From NCBI GenBank assembly GCA_047495785.1, contig JBLDXI010000007.1, positions 1,612,001 to 1,676,000 on the forward strand: a DNA stretch of 64,000 nt, in the 5' to 3' direction. Position numbers and translations under genes: made by a program. Below, one piece after another: positions 18,047 through 47,667 of this stretch; the first letter of the stretch is position 1, and each line of letters starts with the position of its first letter. Source of the stretch: Lepidodermella squamata. Its lineage: Eukaryota; Animalia; Gastrotricha. The notes beneath the pieces were generated by a model. It saw nothing but the letters and a program-made list of their open reading frames with translations, did not search any database and was not told the DNA's origin.

Positions 18047-18901
18047 GAATATTGCTTGTATTGAATAGCTTCATCTTGCCATGGTATCCAATAAACCAAT
18101 GAATTTCAAATTTTTGCTTTGCTTTTAAATTTCAGGAAGAAGGAACTCGAATACGTTTCCGGCATTACTACTCCTTATGGATATCCATGATTGGTAAATC
18201 GGGCTGTTACTCAAGCCAAAGGCACTGATAGCCCTTGATATAAACCCTACTAATGCTGTTGTGAGGTGCACAAATAAGGAAGTTACTATAACTAAAAGCT
18301 GCCAGTTGTCGAAGTCGTCCGCCGTCTCTTGCCGAGATCATTCGAGCCCGTTACATAAGCAGGAAGCAGGCTATTCTGTAAATTCAGTGTCATTATTATA
18401 TATGGCTTGCATTTTTTTAATACGATGCAGTTGTCATCTCGTGTACCGGAGTACAGAAAGCATTTACAAATCAGCACAGCTTGTTGCATTGCGTCGATAA
18501 AGCAGAGCGGGCGCGTGGAGGAAACTTGGGTGGGCCTGATGATGTGCATTTTCCGTTGAGGTCACTTCGCTTGGTAATTGTTCTCCTTCTTACTGGCGAC
18601 GAGCTTCGTTCTGATACTTTTCTCCCTCCTGATTGCTTGTCTCTGGCGAATTAGGCCTAATTATGATTTGATGAGTGACGCAACAAAGCGAAGCGTGCCA
18701 CATCCTAGGTGAAATATATGTGGCTTCATAATATCGGCTAATTATACTGCGTCATTTTACAGGAGTTCCCTATCTTCTGACACGCCCACGGCATAGTGCA
18801 ACATGCTAAGACTGATGTGAGATAGCTGACGCCGAGGTAATTAAGTAATCTTAAGAAAGGATTTCCCTCTGATTTTGAATTGTCATAGCTTCTACGAAAA
18901 A

Positions 18902-26144: not shown

Positions 26145-28463
26145 ATGTATGCTTTTTTAGCTATTTTACTTATATTGACAGCCATCACTGCTGGCGAAAA
26201 GCGTTTTATTTTGAAAATCCCTATGACGATGCCATTGGGTGGCCGAGTCAACCCAATGGGCCCAATGTGTACCGAAGCCCTTAAATTCGTTCTTGAGGCA
26301 ATCAACTCAAATCCGAATTTCTTGCCAAATTACAAAATTCAAATAGATTTAGGCGACGATCAGTGTTCAGCCGCCGCCGCTGCTAAGATGTCTATTCAGA
26401 TATACGAGAACATTAAACCAGTTCTACCAGCATCTCAAGTGCTGGGAACGTTGACCCTACCAGAGAATTTCACTGAGTCGAGCGAAGCTTATGTTCCTCC
26501 CATATACATTGGAGGAATTTGCTCCCCTACATGTTCAGCCTCAGCTCGCCTGCCCCAGCAATACGGCTTCATCAATATACTGATTGGGTGCAATGAGCCA
26601 CGCTACACAAATCGAAAGCTATACCCGAATTTCTATAGGTTCGCGCCATCTTTTATTGAGGTTGAAAAATTCAGAGCAAAACTGTTGACCCACATGGGCT
26701 GGAATAAAATCGGATACTTGGCTGATGCCGTTCAAACGACACCTGAGGATGCTGTCTACTTTTTCAGGGCTGTTCTAGCTGCTGGGAAGAAAGTTGCGGC
26801 TGAGGAGTTCTTCGTAGATAGCCCAGCTGAGTCTTTAGCCAGGCTGCAATCTGCCGATGTCCGAGTAATCTGGGCAAACTGCTATTTTAATAACTGCCCG
26901 GCAGTTGCTTGCGAAGCTCACCGAATCGGTCTTTTCGGCCCTAAGTATGTTTGGATGTTCAACATCTGGATTGATTTCACCAACCTTCCCGCATCAACTA
27001 GCTGCTCGAGGAAAATACTACTCGAATTCGCTGAGTTCTCGATATATATTGGTCAAGATGTGAGTGGGGAATCTCGACCAGATGATACTCGAACTGGAAT
27101 AGGAGTAACTCGAGGTGAATTCCTAAACCATATGAGGACTAAAATTCCTGAATTTGAACGTCACAACGCTTACGCTTGGCGATTAGTATGCGCCGAGGAT
27201 GTCATTATCGCGGCCTCAGTTCTGCACCAAGTTGAGATGCAACTAATAAGTGACAATGAAACGCTTAAAGATCTGATCACAAATTCAAGCCGAAGTTCGG
27301 AGCTTCGGGAGTTGATCCGAGTCAACACGGAGAACATTAAAGCTACTGGCCTTCTGTATGATGCTGGATTTGTCGATAGACAGTTTGAGTCGATTGGCCC
27401 ACCTCTTGTCATTGTGCAACAAGTGAAAGGAACTCGTTTTACTGCTCTGGTCACAACAAATCGAAGTGAGGAAAATATGGATAGGTATTTTCAGATTTTA
27501 TCACCGCTAAAATGGGCCACCGTTGACGGCAAACCCCCGATGACAGAGCCTGTCGAAATCATACGATTGAAAAAATCGAGCTCCAAAATTATTACTGGAG
27601 TGATAACTTCATCTGCTATTAGCTTAGCCGCAGTTTGGATGGTTCGATTAATCATGAAGTTACGGAAAATCGATAAGTCCGCAACTCTCAATACGCTGAT
27701 TTGTATTGGCCCGACCCTGGGTTCAATTTCTGTTTTCACTTACCCTCTGGACGATTCGATTCAGCCTAATTTGACGCTCTTCTGTACAGCTCTTGGTCCT
27801 CTAATATCGTTTGGATTTTCCATCTCAATCGGATCTTTAATTGTCAAGCTTTGCCTGATCAAGTTTGATGCCGGAAATAAGTATAGGAATTACGGTTATT
27901 GCTTCCTTATCATGATTCTCATGGCAGATGCTTGTCTACTTGAAGCTTGGTACCTCAGCAAATTCAAACCAACTGCTACAACTATGAGAAAAATTTGGTA
28001 CGATGAGGCATATGACGCTAACATCACCGAGGTGGCCAATCGATGCTCTTTCACATCATCGCAGGTTTCCTATTCCGCGATCGCTCTGATGTGTCTACAG
28101 GCAGTTTTGATTATATCAGCTGTTATTCTTGCGGTCGCCTCGTTTCGAACAAAGGATCAGCCGAGGTCCGTTGCAAGCAGGTTGACAAACAGATCCAATC
28201 GCCCGTATATTGTTGAAACCACGTTAACTCATCGCATGGAACAAGCGCTGACAAAAGGAAATGCGTTGGCCGTATATGGCCTGGTATCGATTGTTCTCAT
28301 CTCGTCATTTGCATTTTCCGGTTTCCATTCAAATGACTCGGCGTTGTTTATTATTATATCTGTATACGTAATCGCGACTAATTTGATACTTATATCGATG
28401 TTTTTGTATGAGTCAATCGCAACTTGCGTCAAGCCGAGAGGCAATTCTAATCTGAGATGTTGA
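26145..28463 (+). CDS. GABA-B-like class C GPCR, copy 8 (772 aa; A-type TM3-5, B-type ICL3 to TM7)
   Basis: Intact ORF with the same motifs. Confidence 0.9.
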   Translation: MYAFLAILLILTAITAGEKRFILKIPMTMPLGGRVNPMGPMCTEALKFVLEAINSNPNFLPNYKIQIDLGDDQCSAAAAAKMSIQIYENIKPVLPASQVLGTLTLPENFTESSEAYVPPIYIGGICSPTCSASARLPQQYGFINILIGCNEPRYTNRKLYPNFYRFAPSFIEVEKFRAKLLTHMGWNKIGYLADAVQTTPEDAVYFFRAVLAAGKKVAAEEFFVDSPAESLARLQSADVRVIWANCYFNNCPAVACEAHRIGLFGPKYVWMFNIWIDFTNLPASTSCSRKILLEFAEFSIYIGQDVSGESRPDDTRTGIGVTRGEFLNHMRTKIPEFERHNAYAWRLVCAEDVIIAASVLHQVEMQLISDNETLKDLITNSSRSSELRELIRVNTENIKATGLLYDAGFVDRQFESIGPPLVIVQQVKGTRFTALVTTNRSEENMDRYFQILSPLKWATVDGKPPMTEPVEIIRLKKSSSKIITGVITSSAISLAAVWMVRLIMKLRKIDKSATLNTLICIGPTLGSISVFTYPLDDSIQPNLTLFCTALGPLISFGFSISIGSLIVKLCLIKFDAGNKYRNYGYCFLIMILMADACLLEAWYLSKFKPTATTMRKIWYDEAYDANITEVANRCSFTSSQVSYSAIALMCLQAVLIISAVILAVASFRTKDQPRSVASRLTNRSNRPYIVETTLTHRMEQALTKGNALAVYGLVSIVLISSFAFSGFHSNDSALFIIISVYVIATNLILISMFLYESIATCVKPRGNSNLRC

Positions 28464-29211
28464 TACCGGGCCAGAACCGATGTTTTGTATGTAGAGGCAA
28501 CGATGGCTAAAAAATTAGAAGCAAGATTTTTGGAAACGGGGAAATGATCGAGAGCAAAGATTAAGGCTTAATACTGCTGTTCCTTGCCGTGAACCGTTTT
28601 ATCTTTTCATAATACAGTGTGTCCAATAAATGTCAACTAAGTCGTCGATTCGTGAAATGTTTCCACGATGCTACATCCGTTCGCTGGGGGACTCGAGCCC
28701 GATTTTTTAGCCATCGCCATTGTTACGCGATCAACTGTTAGCAAGCAGCAGGTCAGCGACATCATGTTTGCGTTCACGTTTTGTATGCAGCAACAAATGA
28801 TATATATTACTCTTCGGGCCCATCAGAATGTTGACTACAGGCTGGACGCAGAAATGTACTGTGAATGACTCGATTTACCAAGTGCACATTTACATGATGA
28901 ATTGTCGTCAATGATCTATATCCGAAAGGCGATGCCAGTATCGTATTACATTGAGCAGCCGCGCTTCGCAGCAATCACTCTTTAATGCTGTCTGGGACAA
29001 CCCTGCAAGGAGTATTCCTCAGTTAATTTAGCCCAAAATATATCAGTATCACTTTGCAAAAATTGAAAGCTTCAGCGAATTTTTCTATGAGTTTTCATTA
29101 ACAGAGTGAATCGGCTAGGATTAAAATTTACTGAACCTACCCTACAATAATCTAATACTGCTGACTTCCCGGACCATAATGTTTTCTTTATTTTATCAAT
29201 TTAGAGCTAAT

Positions 29212-31701
29212 ATGAGAAGCTTGATAACAAGCCTTTTCCAGGACTGGTTAGGCCGCAAAATGATTCTGGGACTGATGCTCGTGATCATGAAAGGAACAAT
29301 AGCCGATAAGCTGTACACCCTTAAGATTCCGATGAATGCTCCGCTAGGCGGCCCGGTTAATCCGATGGGCAACATGTGCACGGAAGCTTCAACCATCGCT
29401 TTGGAGGCTATCAACGCTAACCCTGATATCCTGCCGGATTACAAAATTCAAATAGATATGGCCGACGACCAGTGCCTAGCAGTTGCCGCTCTGAAAACCA
29501 CGATAAACATGTACGATAACCTGAAACCTGTCGTCCCGAGCTCGAAGACGTTCGGAGTCGCCTCGTTGCCAGTGAACGAAACCTTCGCAAGTGAAGCGTA
29601 TGTCCCGCCGATTTATCTCGGCGGCATCTGTTCGCCGACATGCACAACAGCCTCAAGAATGCCGCAGAGTTATGGCTTTATCAACGTTGTAGTTGGGTGC
29701 ACGGAACCTCAGTTCACTAATCGAAAACGATTCGCAAATTTCTACCGTTTCGCCCCGTCGTTCCTTGAGGTGGAGAAGTTCCGCGCGAAAATCATGAACC
29801 TAGTCGGCTGGAACCGCATCGGGTACCTCGCTGATGCCGTACAAACAACGTATGACGACTTTATCTACTTCGCTAAGGCAGAACTAGCCGCCGGGAAGAA
29901 GATCGCGGCGGAAGAGTTCTACTTCGATAATCCGGCAGAATCGCTGCGCCGGTTGAAAGCTGCCGATGTAAGGGTAATCTACGCCAATTGCTACGTCAAC
30001 CTATGCCCGGCTATGGCTTGCGAAGCTCATCGCCAAGGGTTGTATGGGCCTCATATCATATGGATGTTCAACTCATGGATCGATGTCGCAAATACGGCGG
30101 TCCTACCACCGAATTGCACTCGTAAGATGTTGCAAGAATTTGCCGAAAGTTCGCTGTACATCGGGCCTGACTTCCAAGCAACTTCAGTGCCAATGGACTC
30201 GGTGAATACGATTGGATTCACGCTGCGTCAATTCAATGATTTGATGATGAAACGAGTTCCGGACTTCGCAAGTCGAATGGGTGCCTATGCTTGGAGAATC
30301 TTTTGTTTCCAAGACGTCATTCTGGGTGCTCGAATTCTCCACAACGCCGAATTGGAGCTTAATCGACAAAATGAAACTTTGAAAGACCTGATAGCCGATC
30401 CGAGTCGGAAAGAAGAGCTCACAGAGCTTATTCGGAGAAACACGAAACAGCTTGATACTTCCGGAGTTTTTGGCCGAGATGCTTTTGTCAACGGGACAGA
30501 TGAAGGTCTCAACCCTCCAATCGTTGCACTGCAAGTTGCGAAGGGCTCTCGGAAGCCTGTTCTAGTTTCAAGGGAGCTTGATCGCTACAACAGTGACATC
30601 AACAAATTTTTCACGAGGCTGAATCCGATGCAATGGGCCACCCCTGATGGCAGGCCTCCTCTAACCGAGCCGTTGGAAGTTGAAATCAGAAGACATGTAG
30701 GACCAGACATCGTATTGGGCATGATTATCGCTACGGCGGTTTTTGTCTTTTTGAACTGGGTGGTTGGGTTTTTGACCTGGCATAGCTCGCCTACGTTCAA
30801 TTGGTTCAATCTTCTGGCAACACTAGGGGCGACGGCTATTTCGGTATCAGTTTTTCTATTCCCTTTAGACAGCTCGGATCACGAGAACCTTTCCATTTTT
30901 TGCATTGGTGTTCCGCCGTTGTTTCTTCTTGGATTTTCGGCGATGATCGGAGCTTTATTCCTCAAGTTGTGGGGGTTCAGGCACCGACCTGAGGACCGGA
31001 ACGAAAAGCTTCATTATTCGATATTTGCGAGTCTTCTGTTTGTCGACACCTGTCTGCTTGAAGGATGGTACCTCACAGAATTTATGCCGAAATCTATTGT
31101 TGTCACGAAAAGTTCGTACAACGAAATTTCCGATACGATACTCAATGAATATACGTACATTTGCTCCTTCGACAGCGGAGATGTCCATCCGAAATCTGCG
31201 ATTGTTCTAGTTTCCCTTCAGGGCTTGCTGCTGTTTGCTTCTGTCATCGCAGCTATCGGATCCTTCAAAAAGCGAGGACGTCCGCCTAATTCCGCCGCTG
31301 TCTCGCAAAATGTGAATCGAAAAAGTTCCAATAACACACGCAATTCTGTCGCGAGGCTATCCATTGCTGCTAATCAACGCGAATCAAATGCTCATCACAT
31401 TAATTTCGGCGAAGCTCTTATCGAGGAGTTGAGCCATCAGGAGGTGAAAAACATTGCCCTGACGTTGTATTTCCTAGCGTCCATCGCTCTGCTCTGTGCA
31501 TTTGCGTTGGCTGTTTTCGAAATGTCTCCTGTTGGGCTAATCGCGATAATGACAACTTACGCGCTTGCGAGTAATTTCGGGCTGATCATGCTTTTCCAGC
31601 GGCGCACGATAATGATGGGTTTGTCTAAGATTGGTCTGGTTAAGGATGTCAGTCTTAGTAGTAGCGTCAGCATCGCCGTTGGAACTGATGCTCCCAATTA
31701 G
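29212..31701 (+). CDS. GABA-B-like class C GPCR, divergent copy 9 (start at 29212 or 29260)
   Basis: Same motifs but much more diverged; a splice-acceptor-like TTTTATCAATTTAG at 29191-29204 argues against the 29179 start. Confidence 0.88.
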   Translation: MRSLITSLFQDWLGRKMILGLMLVIMKGTIADKLYTLKIPMNAPLGGPVNPMGNMCTEASTIALEAINANPDILPDYKIQIDMADDQCLAVAALKTTINMYDNLKPVVPSSKTFGVASLPVNETFASEAYVPPIYLGGICSPTCTTASRMPQSYGFINVVVGCTEPQFTNRKRFANFYRFAPSFLEVEKFRAKIMNLVGWNRIGYLADAVQTTYDDFIYFAKAELAAGKKIAAEEFYFDNPAESLRRLKAADVRVIYANCYVNLCPAMACEAHRQGLYGPHIIWMFNSWIDVANTAVLPPNCTRKMLQEFAESSLYIGPDFQATSVPMDSVNTIGFTLRQFNDLMMKRVPDFASRMGAYAWRIFCFQDVILGARILHNAELELNRQNETLKDLIADPSRKEELTELIRRNTKQLDTSGVFGRDAFVNGTDEGLNPPIVALQVAKGSRKPVLVSRELDRYNSDINKFFTRLNPMQWATPDGRPPLTEPLEVEIRRHVGPDIVLGMIIATAVFVFLNWVVGFLTWHSSPTFNWFNLLATLGATAISVSVFLFPLDSSDHENLSIFCIGVPPLFLLGFSAMIGALFLKLWGFRHRPEDRNEKLHYSIFASLLFVDTCLLEGWYLTEFMPKSIVVTKSSYNEISDTILNEYTYICSFDSGDVHPKSAIVLVSLQGLLLFASVIAAIGSFKKRGRPPNSAAVSQNVNRKSSNNTRNSVARLSIAANQRESNAHHINFGEALIEELSHQEVKNIALTLYFLASIALLCAFALAVFEMSPVGLIAIMTTYALASNFGLIMLFQRRTIMMGLSKIGLVKDVSLSSSVSIAVGTDAPN

Positions 31702-33598: not shown

Positions 33599-36500
33599 TT
33601 AGACAAGGTGATGCTTACAGTTATTGAAAATCACACGCCACTCTTCGCCGCATTTCCGCGACGCTACCTGAGCGGGACATTGGCCATTCGCATCGCTAAT
33701 CGCCGGGTTCGCCCCAGCTTGAAGCAGCAACTCAGCCGCTTCCAAATCACCCCGCAAAACCGCCACCATCAACGCGGTATAACCATGCGTATTCGTCGCA
33801 TTTATATCAATGCCGCGATCGATTAAAATCCGTGCAGTTGCGGTGTCGTGATTTTTCACCGCCAACATCAATCCGTTGTAGCCATCGGCATCTTTTGCTT
33901 CGATATCAGCACCGGCATCGAGTAACAGCTTCGCCATCAAGCTATTCGCCTTCCATACGCTGATAAGCAGGGCGTTGTAGCCGTGCTGGTCTTTCTGGTC
34001 GACGTTGGCACCTCTTTCGAGCAAAAGGCGGACTAGGGCCATGTCTTCATTTCGAGTAGCGGCAATAAGAGCGGTTTCTTTGTAGACATTTTGATGATTC
34101 ATCTCCACCCCGGCGTCAATTAATAATCTCGCAATTTTCGCGCGTCTATTTTTAGCAGCCACGATTAAAGCTGAATTTTTTAATTCGTCAGTCTGGTGAA
34201 GGGAGGCGCCGTTCCGAATCAAGAGCCTGAAAATTTTAAAATTTTAATTTTAATTAATTTTGATTTTAACTAATTTTAATTTTAATTAATTTTGATTTTA
34301 ACCAATTTTAATTTTAATTAATTTTGATTTTAATTTTAAATTAACTAATTACCTAGCGATTTCAATGTGGCCCTCTCTTGCGGCGATGATAAGTGGCGTG
34401 TAGCCTTGATTCCCACTCAAATTCACATCAGCCCGATTTTCAACAAGAATCCGGGTCATTTCGATGTTGCCATCTTCGACGGCCATTATCAGCGCAATAT
34501 TGCCCTCGCTGTCTCTCGAATTCGGGTCAATTGCGCGTTTTTTCACTAGATACTCGACAACTTGTTGTTGATCACTGCGAATCGCTTCGAATAACGCGTC
34601 GATTGATGTTTGCGGCATTATATCAGCATCGAGGCCGCAGTTGAAGAGCAGCTCTAACACTTCGACATGGCCATTTGAAGCGGCTGATAGAATTGCCGAG
34701 GATACGCCGTCACGAGCACCAAACAATAGCAAAATTTTCACTGTGAAAATTTTAAAATTTCATATAATTATTTGTCAATTTTCAGCCAATAAATGAGCTT
34801 ACCTGAAGCGACATGGCCATTTTCAGCAGCCTTAACGAGGGCAGTTTTCCCACGCTGATCAGTTTGGTCGATCAGACATTCGATGTCTGTTTTAGCTGAA
34901 GATTTCAGAAGCATCTGGATGACTGAGATGTGGCCATTCGAAGCTGCGCGCATCAAGGCAGTCCTTGATTATGCAAAATATTATAATAAATTTGTTGCCT
35001 TTCGAATAAATTCAGGTCCGGCAGCCTTTTACCTGTGGCTATCATCGAATAGCATCGGATTGGCCTTAAATTGCAGCAAAATTTTGACAAGATTAGAGCA
35101 ACCATTTTTTGCCGCTATCATGAGAGATGTGAATCCTCCTTAATAAATAATTAAATTAAAAAAATGATGACCATTGAAAGATAGCTTACGATTATCCCGC
35201 GAATTAACGTTCGCTCCGCTATTCAGCAAAAACTGAGCAATCATCGTGTGTCCGAAGCAAGCAGTCAGAACTGTGAAATTGAAAAAATAGTGTTGGGCCA
35301 TGGGTCATGGGTGTAATCGAATTACTCAATGCACTAGCCCCAGTTTTTCGATACTTCATTTCGATATCCGCGCCAAATTCAACCAATAATTGAACCGCGG
35401 CGATATGGTTATTCTTGACAGCCATCATCAACGCAGTGAGGCCGTCATTAGTCGTCGCATTAATGTCTAGGAGACCCGTCGAAAGCAACAACTTTGACAT
35501 TAACACATCACCTATATTTCAATTTAAAAAAAAATCAGAATTCGGAGAAAAGATAAAAAATCGAGCTATACCTCGATGAGAACTCATCATCAACGCATTT
35601 CGGCCGTAGTTATCCGCAACGGAAATCAGTGACTGTTTGGACCTAGCGAGCAACAGCTTCGCAATGTCGATGAACCCATTTTCGCACGCAGTTTTAAGAA
35701 TTGTCGAGTTACACTCGTCAACTAAACCCGGGTCAGCGCCGTAATTTTCAAGAAGCGCCTTGGCAACATGGCTCTGCCCAGCCTCGGCAGCAAGATGTAA
35801 AGCGGTCAGACCGCAGTGGTCGGTTTTATTGACATTCGCTCCGAGTTGTATCAAGACTTGGCAAGTTTCGAGATGGCCGTTTTCGGCCGCTCTCATTAAA
35901 CCTGTTCTCCCGTTTTCATCCTGAGCATCGACTACGGCACCTTTTTCTATCAGCAATCGAATGATAGGAACGTTGCCCTTCTCAGCTGCGGCAATTCTAG
36001 AGGAAAAATCGTTCGAAATTTCCAGAAAAAAATGAAAAATAAATAGAATGATAACAGTTTTGGATCATTTTCAAATTTCAAATTTCAAAATTTGAGTTTT
36101 TAAATTTTGAATTTTCAAATTTGAATATCGAATATTGAATTTTGAATTTTGAATTTTGAATTTTTAAATTTTTAAAATTTCGAATGTTTGAATTTTTGAA
36201 TTTTTGAATTTTGAATTTTGAATTTTGAATTTTTGAATTTTTGAATTTTGAATTTTGAATTTTGAATCTTGAATTTTGAATTAATTTTGAATATTAAACT
36301 TTTAAATTGTTAAATTTTCGATTTTCAATCTAATTTTTTTTTTAATTTCGGCAACCTAGGACTTACAGCGCTGATACGCCATTATTATCCTTGAAATTGA
36401 GAGTCGCTGGACAAGCCAGAAGAAGCATTTCAACAGCTGGAAGCTGGTTATTCCAAGCTGCGATTTGCAAGGCACTTCTTCCATGCTTATCAACAGCTTT

Positions 36501-39500
36501 TAGGCCCGAAACAGCGCTGCTCTGAAGTAGCATCAGCCGTAGAATTTCCACGTTATCGCCAGTGGCTGCTAACATAAGCGGCGATCGGCCATTTTTATCG
36601 CGCGAATTTACATCGGCGCCGCGATCTAGTAAAATCTTCACGATTTCCGTATTGGAATCGTAAACTGCTCGGCTGTGATAAAAGAAAAAAAATTAACTAT
36701 TATTTTTCCACTCTCAAAAAAGTCCCGTACCCCACTTTTCGGTCCCATTCTAAACGCAAATGTCACTTTATATTTTCATAAATGTCCTTTAATGGGTAAA
36801 GGAACGTGTACATTTTGAAATCTTGCCACTTGTCCCTTTATCGGCTTTAATTGTCCCTTAGTAGGCTAAAGGGACAGTTTCAATGCAAAACAAAACCCGA
36901 ATCAGAGAGAAATTTTGCCAATTGACAAAGGGACATTTTCAGTGCTCAAAAACTAACATATTTTTTAGGTAAAACTAAAAATGTCACTTTGTCATAAAGG
37001 CTGATAAATTTTGTGCATATGCAAATAAATTGGCTGGAATACACGCTGATTACTCAGGAGTGGGGTCAAAGAATAATTTTCAGTGAAATTCCATCTCGCG
37101 TCGATCTTCAATTTGAACCTTGGACTCCATCTACTACCCATGACCACCTTCATCTACCTTTGCTCTTACCACTTCCCTGACACCTCACTTGACGCCCTTC
37201 TAATAGATAATAGATTGTATTAGATTCTGAGCGTTGAAGTTGAGAGGATCTTCTGAACTCAGAAGATCGATAGATCAACAATATGAATAAAAATAATGAA
37301 TGAACCCACGGATGGACTACAAACGTCACTGATAATCATCGAAATAACGGGACCTTTGCGTTTTATCAATCAATATTACGATGAAACGAAGATAAATTTA
37401 ACATTATAGTTGTCTTTGTTCTCCTCCATTGCGTAGAGGAGAATGGGTACGCGGGAAGAACTTTGTCACGTTCTAAGTAAGGGACAATTACTCGATGACA
37501 AAGGGACATTTTAGAAGCTTTTATCACTGCTCGCGGCTAATTTGTCCCTTTATCCCAAAAGAAAGTGACAAAGTTCTTCCCGCGTCTTTATTCTTTTTGT
37601 ATAGGGCTATAACGGGACTTTTATGAGAGTGTTCAGATTCAATAAAAAACCTCAAGGCAGTTTTGCCGAATTCATCAATTGCGTTCAAATCCGCACCAGC
37701 TTCGATAATAAGTTGAACAACTGTCGGATTTCGACTCCAAACAGCCGCCATGAGGGCAGTCCTTCGATGATCATCCACAGCATTGATTTCAAACTCCTTC
37801 TGCTCCAACACAAATTTCACCAAATCCGATTTCCCACTCAAAGCCGCGCTGATTAGAGGTATCAGGGTAGCGTGGCCATTTTTAGGCTGATGAACTTTGG
37901 TTTCTTTGTACAACATTTTCGCTACTTCGAGATGGCCATGTTCCAATGCGATGATTAGCGCTGTTTTCCCATGAGCATCCTTAGTACCAGGATGGGCACC
38001 TGAGTCGAGTAAAAACCGGGTTAAATCAGGCAAACCTCGAGCTGCGGCCATTACCAACGCAGTTCGCCCGAATCTTGGCTCATTCGCGGTTAAAAGACCC
38101 TTCCGATACGGCGCAATTTGTTGACTTTCAATCAACATTTTAACCAAGTCAAAACCGTCGTAAGATGTCGAGTAGACGAAAGATTGGCGGATGAAGGCCT
38201 CCGCGACCTTTGACCTCGCGCAAATTAGACCAAAAGACTTGACTATACCAAATGATCGACGTTCATCCTTAGCCAGGGTGTTCACAAATCGGCTGAATAA
38301 TTCTAACCACGTCGATTCGAAAATTGGCGATTCGTTGTGAGGATTTTGATCTTCGAGTAAGAAGCCGTAAGCGTGTTGAAAAAAATAGTCGCATAAATTG
38401 ATGACGATTAGCTGGCACTCGGAAAATCGCCACAAATAATCGGCTGATTCGACAATGGCGATGATCTTCGTTAGTAGCCGCTTCCTGCCAAGTCGGAGTG
38501 CCTCGTGGAATGTCGACTCGATATTTCCGTTTTCGGCGATAAACGCGGCGGATATCATTGCACATCGCATTTCAGAAACATTTTCACTAAAATTAAAAAT
38601 AACGATAAAAACTAAAAATTTAAATTTAAATTCAACTTTTTCAATTACCCTAATAGAAAATTTCCTAAAAATCAATAATTAATGAGAAAATTATTATCAA
38701 CTGTCAAAACTGTAGTTCTCCAGAAATTCGTATAAAATGGAAAATTTTAATTTCAATTTTCAAATTTCTCAAAATTATAATTCTTATAAGTTTCCTGGTT
38801 TTCGGAATAAAATACCTATTCAAGTTGAGATTTTGACGCTTAGCAGCGAGGCGAAGGGTAGCATTGAATACGATCGAGTGAACGCAGAACAACTTGTTGT
38901 TAGCTTTGTCAGTTGATTCGGATGAAATGAATTCGCCATCGATAAGTGGCCTGATTAGGGATTTTCGACAAAATTCCTGGCAACGTCGTTCAGCTTCAGG
39001 TCGTCCAACTTTCCTATTGAACAAAGCTTTCGAATTTCAAATTTTTTCAGAGATATTTCGAGTCTATACCAAATAAGCATTAAATCATCGATATCAACAG
39101 CTTCACCGGGTTCGAACAGTAGAAAAGATCGCCAAAACGAATTCCCAACCAAAATCGAATCCAGCAATTTCAGAGCAAGTGAATCGATCGAATCATCGCT
39201 GAATTGCATCAAATCTTCCCCGCCCGTGTTATCAATCTCGAATTTACTTTTTATCAGCGAAGCAATCAAAGGCGATCCTTTGCATAATTTCGCTAGTTTT
39301 GGGACATCGCTTTGATTCGGCAATGATTTTTCCAATATTTGAGCCATTTGCGAATCGGGAATTTTCGAAATTTCAATGCAATTTAGCGGCAATTTTTCGT
39401 CCGTATGCAACCCAACTTTTTTGTTTAAAATTGCGACGCAACGAACTACAGGATTCAGATTGGCCATAACGTAGGACAAGGCCTCGATATCCGTAACACT

Positions 39501-40844
39501 GTCGACAACGATTAATATCGACTGATCGGGTAGGAGGCATACATTTCGAGCAATGTGATCGTTGATTTTCGCGAGTAGTGTCTGGTTAATCAGGGCCGAT
39601 GCTGGGCTGTCAAGGTCCAGGCTATCAATGCCGAAAGCTGTCACCTGATCGGTGCCAAGCAATAACCGGCCAATTTCGGTGATTAAGGAGTTACTTGAAG
39701 CTCGAGTTCCGCTAGATGGGGGCGATAGTTGTTGCATATCGAGCCAAATTAAACTGGCAACTCGACATTTTTCGGCGAGAAATTTCGAATCGTAAGCGAT
39801 AGTTGTAACCAGCGATGTAGTGCCAAGGCCAGCATCCCCAACTAGCCACAGAACTTTTTCTACAGCAAAAAAATTGTGAAATTGATCATGAAATAATCCT
39901 GAAAAATTCTTCACCAGTATTAAGCCTTGTAGATTGGTCCAACAATTTTTCAACAGCACTGTAAATCGCGCTTTGTTCGATGCGTTGTAGTCTGAAATCG
40001 GCACTTATAGTCGGAAATTTCCCCAGCCGAGGAATTCTTGAAACAATAAAAATGCACATTGAATCTTGAAGGGTGCCAATTAGACACCCTAAGAGTGTGG
40101 AGCAAAGTCGATATCGATTTCCTGTATCGATTTTTGATTTTACAAAGCAGTGATTTCCGATATCCGATATCAGAGCCCTATAGTTATCTAACGGTACCAG
40201 GAAGCTGAAGAAAAAACCGCAGGGTGAATCATTATTGATCAGGAAATTGAAACAAAATGGGAAAATGTATCGCTGGAACCTCAATTTTAGCCATTTATTA
40301 AGCGATTGGACCCAAGGTAAAAATTAAAAAATTGCAAACCTTGTATTTTCGACGAGGCATTCTGTTATCGTGTCGATAATGCCCTGGTCCGCCTTTGGCA
40401 ATAAATTATGATCATCAATCAAAGCCCGAATTCCATGTGTTCGCAAATCCCTGAAATACATGTTTTGCCATTAATTAATTAAAAAAAATAAAAACCCCAC
40501 CTTAAAAAATCGAAATTTCGAATTTCGTCATGCAATGCCAGAGTTTGAAACATTTTCTCGAGTCGCGTTTCAGGACTGACTTCTTTAGTGATTTGAAGGC
40601 ATTCGGCCGGTGTCAAAGCGCCTGATCGGCAAATGACGCCGAGTAGTCGCTCCATAACGGCGCTGTCTACCGGTCCATGACTCAAATCGAATAGCTTCGT
40701 GATTGCTCGTAAAAAGTCAGCCATTGATAAATTCGGCTGCCCGGTAGTTTTCAAGGATTCAGATTCGTACTTGGCAAAATCAGGCGTTGAAGTTAGCCAA
40801 ACCGGCAGGAAATTTCGATAATAACTAGAATCAATATTATCCAT
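33599..40844 (-). CDS. Apaf-1-like CARD + NB-ARC + ~25 ankyrin repeats (~1649 aa). Exons 40844-40501, 40450-40340, 40204-39915, 39859-39070, 39013-38816, 38586-37651, 36672-36367, 35996-35572, 35511-35326, 35270-35190, 35138-35033, 34963-34803, 34740-34353, 34226-33599
   Basis: All 13 introns are GT-AG and phase-consistent, giving 4950 nt. Motifs: CARD (GALTPAE..R..D..F..L..G..L), P-loop GDAGLGTT, Walker B ILIVVDSV, CKGSPLIASLI, QEFCRKSLI, VHS, then G-TAL-A---GH ankyrin units. A further in-frame 51-bp intron may lie in exon 3. Confidence 0.82.
36070..36300. repeat. Intronic (TTTTGAA)n-type tandem repeat
   Basis: More than 20 imperfect 7-8 bp units within intron 35997-36366. Confidence 0.9.
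36709..37631. mobile_element. Non-autonomous CACTA/CMC-like element (923 bp) in intron 36673-37650
   Basis: TIR CACTCTCA(A/T)AAAAGTCCCGT at both ends; 3-bp TSD TTC (36706-36708, 37632-37634); subterminal AAGGGACA/TGTCCCTT repeats. Confidence 0.8.
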
Positions 40845-41377: not shown

Positions 41378-42229
41378 TTATTGAACCTCTTTGCGCATTT
41401 TAGTAAGAATTAGGTCATAGATGGGCAATAAAAGCGCGGCCCCGACAGTTCGAATTGCACTTGAGCCGACCCCGCGATAAAACCCAGCCACGCCGTTTTT
41501 CCGCCAAATTTTGACCCAGCATTGCCACAACGTCAACCCAGACCCATACCTAACTGACAGCCGATGTCGAACAATGTCAAAAGGATAGGCAATAAAACTG
41601 GCTGTTAGCGTTGTTGTTTGCGCAATAGCCCATGAGAAGAAAAACCCGGGCGGGTCGAGTTTGTTCTGTGAAAAAGCTGATATCAGGGTTTCATACAGGC
41701 CAAAATAACACGCTCGCTACACGGTCACGCATTGAAGCGACGGTAAAAAGCCGCGATACCAGCCTCGAAAACTTCGCGTGTAATTACTCTCTGTTAGACT
41801 TGTCAGCTTTTCGCCAATATCCGTCGCGGAAAAACTTGCGCCAAACGCCGAGTACATCGGGTAGAGCGTAACCACAGTTGTCGCGCCAGCCAAAGCTCCG
41901 GCGGCTAGGTTAATCGCGAAAATTCGCTTCGGTGAATGGGGAAAATCTGTCATTTGATCGTCGGTTTGGCGAAGGAGAGCTGCGCGAAATTTCGAGTTGA
42001 AAGCGAACGTAAAACCTTCGATAGGCACGCCACGCATGATGTTGAGGACATTTCCGGACCAGTAGGCCATGTAACGGTTTTGACTGAGTTCTGTTGCCAT
42101 TTCGACGTAATTCGCTACGGGAGAAATTACAGTTTTAGCCGCCACAGTCGCCAGACCAGCCGCCATAAAATCACGTGCAAAATCATTGAAATAAACACTT
42201 CTTTTCAAATCTAAATTCGAGTTTTCCAT
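41378..42229 (-). CDS. Divergent ADP/ATP carrier (SLC25/ANT)-like paralog A, intronless, with one in-frame TAG at 41719-41717 (readthrough, null allele or young pseudogene)
   Basis: DFMAAG..AKT, WSGN, NLAAGALAGATT..YP, YRGFLPS; after the TAG the frame continues RACYFGLYET..SWAIAQ..AYPFDIVRHRL..FYRG..RTVGAALLLPIYD..Q to TAA. Confidence 0.75.
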
Positions 42230-42290
42230 ATTTTTTCTATGAAAAATGAAAAAAATACCATTGGATTTGTGTTTTAATTTTTTTTAAATT

Positions 42291-43404
42291 TTAGGCACTG
42301 TGCCTTTGGTCTTCAAAAGCCTCGTGTTGTTTCATGTTTTTCTTGACAATTCCGTAAAAAACGAGAGTCAGAGACGCGCCAATATTGCGCATGCCACTAG
42401 CCAGGCCGCCCTTGTAAAAACCGCCCTCATTTCGGACACTTTCAACAGCGCGCCACAAGGAAGGCTGGCGATGCAGGCCCCTACCCTCAGCGTGCATGCC
42501 GATGTAATGACGGCGAACCATGTCGAGCGGGTAGACGAAGTAGGCTGTTGCGGTTGTAGTCAGCCAGGCAATGGTCCAGTCAGTGATGAAATTCGAGTTG
42601 CCAGGGTACGTGTTCAGGTAGCTTTGGGCTGTGTCGTAGAAACCGAAATAACCGGCGCGATACAGGGCGGAGCAGCCGAGGGAAGGCAACAGGCCACGGT
42701 AAACCCCGAAAAAACCATGCGATCGAAGTTTAGCTGAAACAATTCCAAAAATAAAAAATTTGAAAATTGGGTGAAACTTTTAAATTCATAAAATTCATTG
42801 TAAAATTAAAATTAAAATTGAATAAAATTAAATTAAAAAAATAAATTAAATTAAAAATAAATTTATAAAATTTCAAATTTAACTAAATTTTGAAAATTTA
42901 ATTTAATTCAATTTGAATTATACCGAGAACAGCTTTTTGGTAAGTTTTGAGGCGATGATGGCCAATAGGCTTCGTCTCGTCTAGCTCCAATATTGGCGAT
43001 GTAACAGGATAGACAATCAGAACCGTGCTCAAACCAGCCGCAGCTCCGGCCGCTAAGTTGGCCCCGGCAAATTTGTAAAAATCAACGCCAGAATCCGTGC
43101 TTTGCGTTGTTTGAAACGCGCGTTTGTAGTGGTCGTAGAAAGAAAATGCGATGCCGTCGATGAACATTGTTCGGGGCAGGCTGCGTAGGTTATCTGACCA
43201 GAAGTAGCGGTCGTAGTGCGGCTGGGAAACCAGGCTGCCGTATAGCTTCACGCGTTCAACGCCGGCAAACATGAATTTACCGACCCCGGTGGCTAGGGCG
43301 CCGGCGAGAAAGTCACGTGACATGGCGTGGGCCATGTCGAACTGCGAGCCTTCCGGCGCATGGGGAACGACTGAATCTAGGTTTGAAGCTGCTGTAGAAT
43401 TCAT
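42291..43404 (-). CDS. Divergent ADP/ATP carrier (SLC25/ANT)-like paralog B; exons 43404-42924 and 42733-42291 (307 aa)
   Basis: DFLAG..ERVKL, NLAAGAAAG..VYP, YRG..YRAGYFGFYDTA, YPLDMVRR, FYKG; phase-1 GT-AG intron joins in frame. Confidence 0.85.
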
Positions 43405-44446
43405 GACTGTAAAGCAAACAATTATAAACAGAGCTCGAAGTTGAACTGAGACTGAGACGTGAGGCCATAGGTTACGCAATTGATTGCCTAACAAACGGAA
43501 AAATCAGAGAAAACGTGTCGGTTTTTTCAGGACAAAATGAAAATAATTTGCGCGAGTGTCTGAATTGTCGAAACTGCCGATACTGGCTGAATAAACCTTC
43601 GAGGAGGTAGCAAAAGTTTTTTCATAATTTTTTCCATCGGACCACCTTTCGTCCTGCACAAACCTCACGGCGATCGGAATTTGAATTAATTTTTGGAAAA
43701 TCTTCCAAGCGGATTTCAACGTAGCGTGTGCATTTCAAACAAAAATCTTATTCGGATTATTAAATAGCCAAGAATAGATAAAATCACTTTTGGTCTCAAA
43801 TTTCAAAACCTTCCAAGGAAAGGCAGACTGTGAATGGCGGAAAAGATGTAGTTTTTTTACCAAGAATTTATCCTTCGTTACGGGTTACGGTACCCTGACC
43901 AGGTTTTTTCCATCTTTAATCTTCAATTTCATGTAAAAATTTGTGAGGAAATTCCGTCTGACTCTTTCATGTCACTTGTTAACGAAACTCCAGCCGTGGT
44001 AAATAGTCATGAATTTTCCTCATTCGATATTCGATCGAACTCCGCCTTATAAATTGTTTGCAAAAGTTGCATTCAGGCGGTCGTATTTTTTATGCCTCGG
44101 GAGTTCGAAGACATTATTCTTCGACCTCATCGCAGCAAAATCGGCGACGCAACGCGCGCTACGGCGCATAAAAAACAGCACACGTGTGATAATCGCTAAT
44201 CATGCGAAATAAGACAGAGGTAATAAAAATTAACGGGTTGCCGCTCATTTTTCTGCTATAACGCAATTTCCACGCCGCATAAAGCGGCGAAGATAAATGG
44301 TCACCTGTCAAGAAGTGGAATCACTGGTTCGGAAGAGCTGCGAATCACCCTAATTAGTACATGTCCTCGGTATAAAATGGCGAGAAAAGTCTCTAGAACC
44401 ACACATTTTCGCGCAGTCTTTCTACTTGCATTTTTTTATTCGCATA

Positions 44447-46188: not shown

Positions 46189-47667
46189 ATGGCTGTGAAC
46201 CCTATTCATCAGCTGTTTATTTGCCGTGGAAAATGCCAACTCTCCTCGCGCGGCTACGATCAGCAGCTATTCCGACTGGCTCGAAGAATTATTGACAAAA
46301 CTAACGGCCAACTTGCAAGTATGACAAAAATGGAACCCGAATCTGAACCGAACACAATCGATCTCGAGCCTCTGAAGCTACAACTACCTCTATTCGACCA
46401 CGAGCTCCATCTTGATATGCCTAAACACGATCGCCTGGTCATCAAAATGCCTCTCGATCGACATAACCAACGCGTCTATCCGATAATTATTGAAATTATT
46501 GCGAAATTTCTGGAAAAGTCCAGAAAAACTTATTTCAGTCCTCAAACCGAAATTTTACTCTGCTGCTACGTCATGGAGCAAGATTCGACAAATTTGGAAA
46601 AAATCTTGGCTGAAATGTCCGATATTCCAAGTTGCATAAAAACTTCGTTGGTTCGATTGTCAATTCAACAGCAATTTTTCGCCGGACTTGAAGTTCTGCT
46701 GAAAAATGGCGCATCGCCCCATTCCAGCCTAAGAATCACCGAAAAAGCTGGTTTAGTTGGTTATGTGATCGACTGCTTCGAAGATCGATTTCCATCAAGG
46801 CCTGACGGGCCGTTCTTGAGCCAAGTTCTCAAATTCCTGATCAAGAACGGCGCGAAAAAACCTGATAGCTCCATCTTCGAGAATCGGACTAAATCAAATT
46901 CTGACCAGCCGAAAATTGTTGACAGAATTCTTGAAAATCGCCAAAAAAAATGCCGATTTTTCTATAAAATTAACGAAAAATCGCCTCGAGATCATGCAGT
47001 TCGGAATACGATCATGCTAGCGATGATGTTCGACGCCGAGGGGGCTGAATTATTTCTATCAGCAACTCCAAAATCGGAATTGAACACGGCTCTCAGGGCT
47101 TGTTTCGACCCATTGCTTATGTACATGTTGGACACTCAAATATTCAACAGCGTAATGGCGTTCGCAATTCTACCGCTACTTAGAGCCGGTGCTGTGCTAC
47201 CCGGCGATTTAACTGGAATTTCGCCGATTTTATCGAAAAATCCGTTTCTTCAATGCTTCGAACGGGCTAAAAATGACTTCTCAATCGCGAAAAGGCCGCA
47301 TTTTATCATCTCATTTTTGTTGGAAATTTGCTCGTCGAATTCGTTTGACCGTAACAAGTTATTGGACACCCTGAACCGTGAAGTAACTTCCAGCTCGCAG
47401 ACCAACCGCCGCCGGCCTGAAATCGCGAATTCGATTGTACTCGAGACTAAATTGACTGCCGTCAAAAACCTGGTCGAATTTCTTCATTTCTGTTTCCCGC
47501 GGCGATTGCAGGCTTTGGCTCGTTCAAAAGTGCTGGAAAATCTGCCAATCGGGGTTCCGGACCGGAAAAATGCCGTGAAAAGTCTGGACCTGCCGAGATG
47601 CCTTGAAGATTACTTGTTGCTGAACGATTTGGAGGAAATTATTAAATTTTCCATGATAAGGCGATAG
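46189..47667 (+). CDS. SOCS-box protein with degenerate ankyrin-like segments (ASB-like E3 adaptor), intronless
   Basis: C-terminal PRRLQALARSKV..VKSLDLPRCLEDYL is a SOCS box; LLKNGASP, LIKNGA and LLRAGA resemble ankyrin ends. The start could be a later Met. Confidence 0.75.
   Translation: MAVNPIHQLFICRGKCQLSSRGYDQQLFRLARRIIDKTNGQLASMTKMEPESEPNTIDLEPLKLQLPLFDHELHLDMPKHDRLVIKMPLDRHNQRVYPIIIEIIAKFLEKSRKTYFSPQTEILLCCYVMEQDSTNLEKILAEMSDIPSCIKTSLVRLSIQQQFFAGLEVLLKNGASPHSSLRITEKAGLVGYVIDCFEDRFPSRPDGPFLSQVLKFLIKNGAKKPDSSIFENRTKSNSDQPKIVDRILENRQKKCRFFYKINEKSPRDHAVRNTIMLAMMFDAEGAELFLSATPKSELNTALRACFDPLLMYMLDTQIFNSVMAFAILPLLRAGAVLPGDLTGISPILSKNPFLQCFERAKNDFSIAKRPHFIISFLLEICSSNSFDRNKLLDTLNREVTSSSQTNRRRPEIANSIVLETKLTAVKNLVEFLHFCFPRRLQALARSKVLENLPIGVPDRKNAVKSLDLPRCLEDYLLLNDLEEIIKFSMIRR

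What the first reader, a model, noticed from the sequence alone, without database searches (positions are those of the whole stretch)
33599..40844. Apaf-1-like CARD-NB-ARC protein with an ankyrin array replacing the WD40 sensor
Seen: 14 exons splice in phase into one ~1649-aa ORF. The N-terminus aligns without gaps to my recollection of the human Apaf-1 CARD (G-LT--E------E-----R-----------D------F---L---G---L). CKGSPLIASLI and QEFCRKSLI closely resemble Apaf-1 CKGSPLVVSLI and QEFVNKSLL. About 25 ankyrin repeats follow. Known: Apaf-1 and Dark use WD40 propellers, CED-4 has no repeat sensor, and NTPase-ankyrin NLRs are best known from fungi. Inference: a caspase-recruiting apoptosome/NLR-like receptor rewired to an input other than cytochrome c. 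I do not know a described animal CARD-NB-ARC-ANK protein, but I cannot search to confirm novelty.
Basis: partly seen in the sequence, partly recalled or inferred. Interest (0 to 1): 0.92.

Follow-up and report, generated by a model that had tools for sequence, protein, structure and literature searches.

The report
Divergent CARD-like NB-ARC ankyrin protein
This is a real, intact gene for a large signalling-scaffold protein whose central ATPase-type module folds like that of the cell-death adaptor Apaf-1 and plant immune receptors. It carries about 26 ankyrin repeats instead of WD40 propellers, a probable but unproven CARD at the front, and a conserved broken nucleotide-binding loop, so it is an unusual variant of a known receptor class rather than a rewired Apaf-1.

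Summary

**Gene model.** The only relative found in 1.84 billion representative proteins is a metagenome gene (P0001/L001). It carries the same P-loop-to-ankyrin region as one uninterrupted 1,376-codon ORF and aligns colinearly at 41% identity. This validates the junctions from E4/E5 onward and shows that the NTPase and ankyrin halves are one gene. The same comparison favours a shorter exon 3 starting at 40036 (1,593 aa) and perhaps a start at Met41.

**Domains.**
- About 26 ankyrin repeats, one-to-one orthologous between the two homologs.
- The NTPase module gets no significant Pfam or PDB sequence hit. Its AlphaFold model matches NB-ARC proteins best: Apaf-1, plant NRC1/2, CED-4 and Dark.
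- CARD is probable but not proven. Language-model neighbours are dominated by CARD families and the Foldseek list is CARD-enriched but insignificant. No profile hit exists.

**Nucleotide switch.** Walker A Lys is Thr, Walker B is "DS", and no sensor-1 Arg is evident. All three states are conserved in both homologs.

**Context.** STAND-ankyrin architectures are already catalogued in corals, sponges and fungi. Unchecked first-reader notes flag similar CARD/TIR-NB-ARC-ankyrin genes elsewhere in this genome.

**Verdict.** A new variant of a known kind, of moderate interest.

The parts
33599..40844 (-). Whole coding region of the gene (14 exons, stop codon at 33601-33599)
   Evidence: the in-phase splice gives 1,649 aa; the revised model gives 1,593 aa; it is colinear with homolog P0001/L001.
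40501..40844 (-). Exon 1 (ATG at 40844; alternative start Met41 at 40724)
   Evidence: Its counterpart, L001 exon 1 (911-1143), ends at the same ...DFL|GT position with phase 2.
40340..40450 (-). Exon 2 (111 nt, phase 2 to 2)
   Evidence: L001 exon 2 is 114 nt with the same phases.
39915..40036 (-). Exon 3, homolog-supported version (122 nt).
   Evidence: the acceptor TTTTTATTGTTTCAAG|A is used and the exon begins RIPRLGKFP, against L001 RIEYHGTFP. L001 exon 3 is 125 nt.
39070..39859 (-). Exon 4: NBD and HD1 of the NB-ARC-like module
38816..39013 (-). Exon 5: winged-helix domain
   Evidence: 58% identity to the homolog
37651..38586 (-). Exon 6: HD2-like helical domain (38586-38082) and the first ankyrin repeats
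36367..36672 (-). Exon 7 (ankyrin)
35572..35996 (-). Exon 8 (ankyrin)
35326..35511 (-). Exon 9 (ankyrin)
35190..35270 (-). Exon 10 (ankyrin)
35033..35138 (-). Exon 11 (ankyrin)
34803..34963 (-). Exon 12 (ankyrin)
34353..34740 (-). Exon 13 (ankyrin)
33599..34226 (-). Exon 14 (ankyrin repeats, short tail, stop)
40390..40724 (-). CARD-like helical domain (aa 41-135 of the revised model, interrupted by intron 1)
   Evidence: 79 of the 100 nearest Atlas clusters are CARD families; five helices, pLDDT 78.7. CARD-enriched but insignificant Foldseek lists. Searches are negative or non-specific.
39813..39839 (-). Walker A variant GDAGLGTTS (Lys replaced by Thr)
   Evidence: Read directly from the sequence. 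The homolog has the same change (GNPGQGTTT).
39498..39515 (-). Walker B variant LIVVDS (second acidic residue replaced by Ser)
   Evidence: conserved in L001. The strand assignment comes from the model.
39267..39278 (-). GSPL (the GxP/GLPL motif of NB-ARC), retained
   Evidence: conserved in both homologs
39078..39125 (-). FLLFEPGEAVDIDDLM, resembling the RNBS-D motif. It is the longest identical stretch between the two homologs.
   Evidence: The motif assignment is from my own knowledge of NB-ARC motifs.
38875..38886 (-). CVHS, at the MHD position of the winged helix, with the His retained
   Evidence: The position is inferred from domain order in the model.
33683..38081 (-). Array of about 26 ankyrin repeats (aa ~691-1566), spread over exons 6-14
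   Evidence: on-register identity to the homolog is 44.5%, against 20% or less off register.

Best explanation
The locus is a single, intact, intron-containing animal gene. It encodes a protein of about 1,590-1,650 aa made of a roughly 95-aa six-helix CARD-like head, a very divergent NB-ARC-clade STAND module (NBD-HD1-WHD-HD2) and a rigid solenoid of about 26 ankyrin repeats.

Shown: the gene model, the fused architecture, the NB-ARC-type fold, the ankyrin array and the altered nucleotide motifs.

Inferred: it works as an NLR/apoptosome-like signalling scaffold. The ankyrin solenoid takes the place of WD40, LRR or TPR as the ligand- or partner-binding and autoinhibitory module. The head recruits a death-fold partner by homotypic interaction once molecules are brought together.

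Walker A Lys, the second Walker B acidic residue and the sensor-1 Arg are all missing, whereas the GxP motif and the MHD-type His are kept, and this state is conserved in a 41%-identical homolog. I therefore infer that the module no longer cycles ATP. Either it holds a nucleotide statically or it acts without one. It would then be a non-switching adaptor, or a sensor/regulator partner of P-loop-competent paralogs, as in plant paired NLRs whose sensor P-loops are dispensable (my own knowledge).

The repeat-by-repeat conservation of the ankyrin array suggests a conserved endogenous partner rather than a fast-evolving pathogen ligand.
For: Gene model and fusion.
- reproduces the 14 exons in phase.
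- the only relative, P0001, is one uninterrupted 1,376-codon ORF from P-loop to the last ankyrin repeat. It aligns colinearly with window aa 253-1642 at 41% identity.
- all 13 junctions lie in near gap-free alignment. No in-frame Met precedes the P-loop in either genome, so the NTPase exon must be spliced to the N-terminal exons.
- the three N-terminal introns have conserved phases (2, 2, 1).

NB-ARC fold.
- the model shows the order NBD, helical domain, winged helix, helical domain.
- Apaf-1 is the top Foldseek match (E 5e-9 to 1e-9; query 2-457 against Apaf-1 148-586).
- the best twelve entries by Z are all NB-ARC proteins (NRC2 14.3, NRC1 13.9, Apaf-1 13.0 with 356 aligned residues, CED-4 11.8, Dark 11.4). 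ORC/Cdc6 rank below them. NLRP3 was rank 41 in the Foldseek PDB list.
- Atlas neighbours are NB-ARC/STAND families.

CARD-like head.

Ankyrin array.

Motif states.
Against: - No profile or pairwise sequence method recognises CARD or NB-ARC at significance.
- Both AlphaFold models rest on alignments of only two sequences. The NTPase model has pLDDT 67 and pTM 0.50.
- Apaf-1 is also the best template for STAND proteins of other families, such as TANC.
- No expression or junction reads were obtained. The only expression hint is that a probable RNA run holds 27% of the sampled words.
- Function, partner and oligomerisation are entirely inferred.
Confidence: 0.55

Rival explanations
1. The gene is this animal's Apaf-1 ortholog. 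It would be a caspase-recruiting apoptosome protein whose WD40 cytochrome-c sensor was replaced by ankyrin repeats, and which still works by nucleotide-driven oligomerisation.
For: Apaf-1 is the first Foldseek hit in two libraries and gives the longest alignment, including HD2. The CARD-like head sits in the Apaf-1 position.
Against: - There is no detectable sequence homology to Apaf-1, CED-4 or Dark, even with a profile.
- Plant NRC proteins match equally well by Z.
- The Walker A Lys, which Apaf-1 and CED-4 need (my own knowledge), is Thr in both homologs.
- Unchecked notes report many NB-ARC-ankyrin paralogs with CARD or TIR heads in this genome. That fits an expanded receptor family better than a single-copy apoptosome gene.
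Confidence: 0.15
2. The N-terminal domain is an unrelated small helical bundle, and the protein is a STAND-derived pseudo-ATPase ankyrin scaffold with a structural or trafficking role. It would resemble TANC1/2 or nephrocystin-3 and have nothing to do with caspases or cell death.
For: - No CARD profile hit exists, and the structural matches for the head are non-specific.
- The P-loop is degenerate.
- The 26 repeats are conserved one to one, as expected for a fixed scaffold surface.
- There is a weak NPHP3_N hit (E 0.006), and nephrocystin-3 appears among the Swiss-Prot fold hits.
- TANC proteins are a precedent for STAND-ANK scaffolds in bilaterians.
Against: 79 of the 100 nearest language-model clusters for the head are CARD families, and the remaining annotated ones are other death folds. 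CARDs dominate the top Foldseek hits, with TM 0.54-0.59. TANC does not appear among the top 30 Swiss-Prot fold matches, and there are no TPRs.
Confidence: 0.25
3. The model is an artefact. It could be two adjacent genes (an NTPase gene and an ankyrin gene) or a decaying pseudogene stitched together by permissive splice choices.
For: No transcript reads were examined. A length-maximising DP readily invents extra exons in this region.
Against: The homolog has the whole P-loop-to-ankyrin region as a single uninterrupted ORF. All junctions align without gaps. There is no stop or frameshift across 4.8 kb of CDS. A probable RNA run holds 27% of the sampled words of the locus.
Confidence: 0.03

Closest known systems
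Apaf-1 (vertebrates), with Dark (Drosophila) and CED-4 (C. elegans)
   Same: The layout is an N-terminal small helical (CARD-type) head followed by NBD-HD1-WHD-HD2. Apaf-1 is the best Foldseek match and gives the longest structural alignment. The GxP motif and the His at the MHD position are retained.
   Different: - No significant sequence similarity.
- An ankyrin solenoid replaces the WD40 propellers (CED-4 has no repeats at all).
- Walker A Lys is Thr, Walker B reads DS, and no sensor-1 Arg is evident.
- The CARD is unproven.
Plant NB-ARC immune receptors (NRC1/NRC2, CNL/TNL), including P-loop-independent 'sensor' NLRs
   Different: Ankyrin repeats replace the LRR. The head is CARD-like rather than CC or TIR. 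The host is an animal. No sequence-level homology is detectable.
Fungal NLRs with NB-ARC or NACHT plus ANK, TPR or WD40 repeats
   Different: Fungal repeats are typically hypervariable, whereas here the 26 repeats are one-to-one conserved. The head is CARD-like and the host is an animal.
Coral, sponge and ctenophore NACHT/NB-ARC-Ank loci
   Same: These are animal STAND proteins with ankyrin repeats. In Acropora they carry CARD, DED or Death heads (PMC4083563). NACHT-Ank proteins are reported in early-diverging metazoans with unknown function (PMC12909245).
   Different: Those are mostly NACHT and are recognised by Pfam. This protein is of the NB-ARC type by fold, invisible to profiles, and has a degenerate nucleotide switch. 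The exact CARD-NB-ARC-ANK combination was not found in the papers I could read.
TANC1/TANC2 (rolling pebbles)
   Same: They are bilaterian STAND NTPase-ankyrin scaffolds, and Apaf-1 (1z6t) is their best modelling template at about 12% identity (PMC5533708).
   Different: TANC proteins have 11 ANK repeats plus TPRs and a coiled coil, conserved Walker motifs and no death-fold head. They are not among the top 30 fold matches here.

Membership tests
Apaf-1/CED-4/Dark apoptosome adaptors | Detectable sequence homology or orthology of the NB-ARC region | tested here: not met
   phmmer and a profile hmmsearch against all PDB chains at E<=10 return no Apaf-1, CED-4 or Dark. The exhaustive phmmer search of 1.84e9 proteins finds only P0001.
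Apaf-1/CED-4/Dark apoptosome adaptors | NBD-HD1-WHD(-HD2) fold | tested here: met
   The model of P0001:1-470 has the expected domain order. Apaf-1 is the top Foldseek match. By Z, Apaf-1 scores 13.0 over 356 residues, CED-4 11.8 and Dark 11.4. Model confidence is only moderate (pLDDT 67).
Apaf-1/CED-4/Dark apoptosome adaptors | Functional Walker A (GxxxxGK[ST]) and Walker B (hhhhDD/E) for (d)ATP binding and exchange | tested here: not met
   Walker A reads GDAGLGTTS and Walker B reads LIVVDS in the window. The homolog has GNPGQGTTT and LIVIDS.
Apaf-1/CED-4/Dark apoptosome adaptors | N-terminal CARD that binds an initiator-caspase CARD | tested here: inconclusive
Apaf-1/CED-4/Dark apoptosome adaptors | C-terminal WD40 propellers (Apaf-1, Dark) | tested here: not met
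   The C-terminal 870 aa are about 26 ankyrin repeats. There is no WD40 hit.
Pfam NB-ARC (PF00931) | Score above the gathering threshold | tested here: not met
   The score is 11.8-12 bits against a cutoff of 23.5, covering only the P-loop region. NACHT scores 14.2 against 26.7. P0001:1-520 gives only NPHP3_N at E 0.006.
NB-ARC / AP-ATPase clade of STAND (structural sense) | Best structural neighbours are NB-ARC proteins rather than NACHT, ORC or MalT types; GxP and MHD-position His are present | tested here: met
   The top twelve entries by Z are all NB-ARC proteins. NLRP3 is rank 41 in the Foldseek PDB list. GSPL and CVHS are conserved in both homologs.
CARD (PF00619) / death-fold superfamily | Six-helix death fold recognised by profile or structure | tested here: inconclusive
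   Five helices are modelled from exon 1 at pLDDT 78.7. The sixth would lie in exon 2 and could not be modelled jointly. See the CARD row above for the mixed search results.
Ankyrin repeat proteins | Tandem 33-residue ANK repeats above Pfam thresholds | tested here: met
   Ank_2 reaches E=1.5e-50 on exon 14 alone and is strong on all the ANK exons scanned. About 26 repeats are counted.
Animal NLRs (NACHT-LRR) | NACHT NTPase plus C-terminal LRRs | tested here: not met
   No LRR is present. NACHT is sub-threshold, and NACHT structures rank well below NB-ARC structures.
TANC family | STAND NTPase plus ANK plus TPR plus coiled coil, with conserved Walker motifs | tested here: not met
   No TPR or coiled-coil domains appear in the Pfam scans. 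The Walker motifs are degenerate. TANC is absent from the top 30 fold hits.

The most novel reading that the evidence does not exclude
This gene is the CARD-headed member of a lineage-specific animal receptor repertoire built on an Apaf-1/plant-R-type NB-ARC module with ankyrin sensors and interchangeable CARD, TIR or SAM-TIR heads. That would be an independent, plant-like and fungus-like invention of NLRs in an animal. This member signals without a nucleotide switch, because its K-to-T P-loop has been conserved over deep divergence.
Probability: 0.3. Interest if true: 0.8.

Novelty: new variant of a known kind. Interest (0 to 1): 0.55.

Why it matters
Apaf-1-type NB-ARC modules in animals are usually thought of as single-copy apoptosome adaptors with WD40 sensors. 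Animal NLR repertoires, by contrast, are built on NACHT-LRR.

Here an NB-ARC-fold protein has an ankyrin solenoid, a probable CARD and a conserved inactivated nucleotide switch. It belongs to a family so isolated that only one relative exists among about 1.8 billion representative proteins. This shows that the scaffold can change both its sensor and its switching chemistry while staying under purifying selection.

If the unchecked notes of CARD- and TIR-headed paralogs in the same genome hold, the animal would carry a convergent, plant-like NLR system. That would be directly testable by domain swaps, cell-death assays and nucleotide-binding assays.

The case also shows that profile-based censuses (Pfam CARD, NB-ARC) would miss this family entirely.

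Tried and rejected
- **Length-maximising splice DP.** It produced a 19-exon, 1,919-aa model with spurious low-complexity exons and weak sites.
- **TALE-repeat resemblance of exon 1, aa 62-99.** The whole-sequence E of 1e-24 is an artefact of one query stretch matching 22 repeats. Single stretches have i-Evalue 7 or higher, and the hit disappears with the two-sequence profile. I rejected it as chance.
- **Widening the family.** An exhaustive phmmer search, two word-indexed searches with the NTPase and WHD-HD2 regions of P0001 and a JGI metagenome scan (a first attempt failed for lack of conserved columns) returned only P0001.
- **Other profile libraries.** PADLOC and NCBIfam gave nothing.
- **Host identification.** Rfam found no families. 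The Atlas neighbours of the adjacent class-C GPCR are diatom-labelled clusters. However, the SOCS box, Cys-loop receptor and LDLa neighbours keep an animal host as the best reading. The phylum was not determined.
- **Spliced proteins.** Joined exon sequences could not be passed to the external tools because only references are allowed. The CARD-like domain was therefore modelled without its predicted sixth helix.
Full report
**Observation**

The region contains exon-like ORF blocks on the minus strand. Every intron is GT-AG and mostly 50-135 nt long, with larger introns of 229, 370 and 978 nt. A length-maximising dynamic program over-extends the model and was discarded. The quoted strings CKGSPLIASLI and QEFCRKSLI are present.

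**Independent validation of the gene model**

An exhaustive phmmer search with the NTPase exon (window 39072-39857, minus strand) against 1.84 billion representative proteins found one relative. This is P0001, 1,376 aa, E=5.6e-37.

P0001 lies on an 8.1-kb metagenome scaffold (L001). There it is a single uninterrupted ORF running from the P-loop to the last ankyrin repeat. The spliced window protein aligns to it colinearly over aa 253-1642, with 41% identity and 33 gap positions.

All 13 exon junctions of the model lie in near gap-free alignment with the homolog. Eleven have zero gaps within ±10 residues. These include 39070/39013, 38816/38586 and 37651/36672. The NTPase and ankyrin halves are therefore one gene.

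In both genomes the ORF carrying the P-loop has no in-frame Met upstream of the P-loop. Upstream of P0001, L001 has three short exons whose intron phases (2, 2, 1) match the window's. The N-terminal exons therefore belong to the same gene.

- **Exon 3.** The revised product is 1,593 aa.
- **Start codon.** L001's start Met aligns with window Met41.

Both alternatives stay in frame, and only RNA data can decide between them.

A probable RNA run holds 27% of the locus's sampled words, which is a weak hint of expression.

**Ankyrin array**

Pfam ankyrin families are very strong on every scanned C-terminal exon. I count about 26 repeats over aa ~691-1566 of the revised model.

Position-matched identity to the homolog is 44.5%. 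Shifting by one or more repeats gives 20% or less. The repeats are therefore one-to-one orthologous, and their number and order are conserved. The array (45% identity) is better conserved than the NBD (31%). The winged helix is the best-conserved domain at 58%.

**NTPase module**

Sequence methods do not recognise it:
- Pfam NB-ARC scores 12 bits against a cutoff of 23.5, and NACHT 14 bits against 26.7. Both matches cover the P-loop only.
- The NTPase half of P0001 gives only a weak NPHP3_N hit.
- phmmer and a profile hmmsearch against all PDB chains find no Apaf-1, CED-4 or Dark at E<=10.
- PADLOC and NCBIfam give nothing.

Language-model features place the module among STAND NTPases of the NB-ARC, AAA_16 and nSTAND kinds.

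An AlphaFold model of P0001:1-470 has pLDDT 67 and pTM 0.50, built from a two-species alignment. Its domain order is α/β NTPase, helical domain, winged helix, second helical domain. Comparisons of this model gave:

| Library | Best matches |
|---|---|
| Foldseek, PDB | Apaf-1 first (3shf, 1z6t; E 5e-9); NLRP3 at rank 41 |
| Foldseek, Swiss-Prot AFDB | Apaf-1 first (E 1e-9; query 2-457 against Apaf-1 148-586), then Dark and plant R proteins |
| ESM Atlas, by shape | Bacterial NB-ARC/TPR regulators and plant NB-ARC proteins |

The module therefore belongs structurally to the NB-ARC (AP-ATPase) clade. A specific affinity to Apaf-1 over plant NB-ARC proteins is not resolved. Apaf-1 is also the best template for STAND proteins of other families, such as TANC (PMC5533708), so a top hit to Apaf-1 is not proof of orthology.

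**Motif states**

| Motif | Window | Homolog (L001) |
|---|---|---|
| Walker A | GDAGLGTTS | GNPGQGTTT |
| Walker B | LIVVDS | LIVIDS |
| End of the sensor-1 strand | AILNKK (no Arg) | GICNSS (no Arg) |
| GxP | GSPL (kept) | GSPL (kept) |
| MHD position of the winged helix | CVHS (His kept) | CVHS (His kept) |
| RNBS-D-like stretch | FLLFEPGEAVDIDDLM | identical |

Assigning these strings to the named NB-ARC motifs rests on my own knowledge of Apaf-1 and plant NB-ARC motifs, and on strand positions in the model.

The altered state is shared by two sequences that are only 31% identical in the NBD. It is therefore old and maintained, not recent decay. This agrees with first-reader note s1-379805.

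**N-terminal domain**

There is no Pfam, NCBIfam or PDB sequence hit. The resemblance of aa 62-99 to a single TALE repeat is not significant per stretch and vanishes with the profile.

Evidence pointing to CARD:
- 79 of the 100 nearest Atlas clusters by language-model features are CARD families. The best scores 0.89 with 182 of 256 shared features. The other annotated clusters are DED and PYRIN.
- AlphaFold on exon 1 from Met41 (74 aa, two sequences) gives five helices at pLDDT 78.7. A sixth helix is expected in exon 2 but could not be modelled jointly.
- Foldseek lists are rich in CARDs: a design based on the Apaf-1 CARD, CED-3, RIP2, caspase-1, NLRP1, NOD1 and CARD8. TM scores are 0.54-0.59, but no E is below 0.56.

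Evidence that is neutral or negative:
- The Atlas shape search shows no CARD.

I rate a CARD-type death fold at roughly 55-60%.

**Context**

Neighbouring genes:
- a SOCS-box protein, a Cys-loop receptor, an LDLa-repeat protein, an Hsp20, a GST and two mitochondrial-carrier-like genes;
- an intact Ty3/gypsy pol;
- a tandem array of at least seven intronless class-C GPCR genes.

The host is most likely an animal with roughly 50-60-nt introns. Its phylum was not determined.

Unchecked first-reader notes list further CARD-, TIR-, SAM-TIR- and TIR-TIR-headed NB-ARC-ankyrin genes, and an "expanded family", elsewhere in this genome. I could not test these. If they are true, they favour an NLR-like repertoire over a single Apaf-1 ortholog.

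**Comparison with the literature**

- Apaf-1 is defined by CARD plus NB-ARC, usually with WD40. "Apaf-1-like" paralogs with unconventional domains occur in cnidarians and echinoderms (PMC10959488).
- Corals encode NACHT/NB-ARC loci with WD40, LRR, Ank or TPR repeats and CARD, DED or Death heads (PMC4083563).
- NACHT-Ank proteins occur in sponges, ctenophores and cnidarians with unknown function (PMC12909245).
- Fungal NLRs commonly combine NB-ARC or NACHT with ankyrin repeats (papers listed).
- Flatworms have ankyrin-prodomain caspases, for which an ankyrin-containing activator has been postulated (PMC11463336). This is context only.

I found no explicit description of an animal CARD-NB-ARC-ankyrin protein. 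The architecture class, however, is not new.

**Mechanism (inferred)**

The protein is most likely an NLR/apoptosome-like scaffold:
- **Ankyrin solenoid.** It would bind a conserved partner or ligand and hold the NB-ARC module closed.
- **Head.** It would recruit a death-fold partner when molecules are brought together.
- **Nucleotide switch.** Without the Walker A Lys, the catalytic acidic residue and the sensor-1 Arg, but with GxP and the MHD-type His, the module probably does not cycle ATP. It may hold a nucleotide statically, or work without one as an adaptor or as a sensor/regulator for P-loop-competent paralogs.

**Verdict**

This is a new variant of a known kind, namely a STAND/NLR-like receptor, and is remarkable for three things:
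- its extreme sequence isolation;
- its conserved degenerate switch;
- its conserved 26-repeat solenoid.

Interest is 0.55.

Noticed in passing
window 4509-31701 (+): Tandem array of at least seven intronless class-C (7tm_3 / ANF_receptor type) GPCR paralogs of about 770-840 aa. The ORFs are at 4509-6827, 10920-13298, 15683-18046, 18875-21232, 22552-24633, 26145-28463 and 29179-31701. The nearest Atlas clusters for the first one are labelled mostly Bacillariophyta (diatoms), not animals.
   Followed up: partly
window 53228-57744 (+): A GC-rich (51-55%) Ty3/gypsy-type retrotransposon. It has an uninterrupted 1,106-aa pol ORF (RT, RNase H, integrase) and an upstream gag-like ORF.
   Followed up: partly
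window 41378-43494 (-): Two divergent mitochondrial-carrier-like genes lie directly upstream of the gene on the same strand. Pfam Mito_carr matches are only partial. They were also flagged by another first-reader note.
   Followed up: partly
window 47998-48642 (+) and 63383-63994 (-): Two clearly paralogous ORFs of about 200-215 aa, probably secreted, with no Pfam hit for the one scanned. They share long similar stretches by eye.
   Followed up: no
window 46189-47667 (+): A 492-aa intronless ORF ending in a SOCS box (E 1.9e-6). The remainder of the protein is unrecognised.
   Followed up: no
window 40548-40661 (-), aa 62-99 of exon 1: One stretch resembles a single TALE repeat. The phmmer whole-sequence E-value is inflated by 22 repeats. 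Each stretch alone is insignificant, and the hit is lost when the homolog is added.
   Followed up: yes
window about 36080-36310, intron 7 of the gene: A low-complexity tandem-repeat stretch inside the 370-nt intron.
   Followed up: no
L001 5871-7654 (-): On the metagenome scaffold, the neighbour of the homolog is a ubiquitin-specific protease gene (zf-UBP + UCH) that the caller split into pieces, probably because of introns. Synteny with the window is not conserved.
   Followed up: no
P0001 (L001 1562-5692): The precomputed Pfam list for P0001 includes PF28177.1, a family absent from the local Pfam copy. I could not look up what it is.
   Followed up: no
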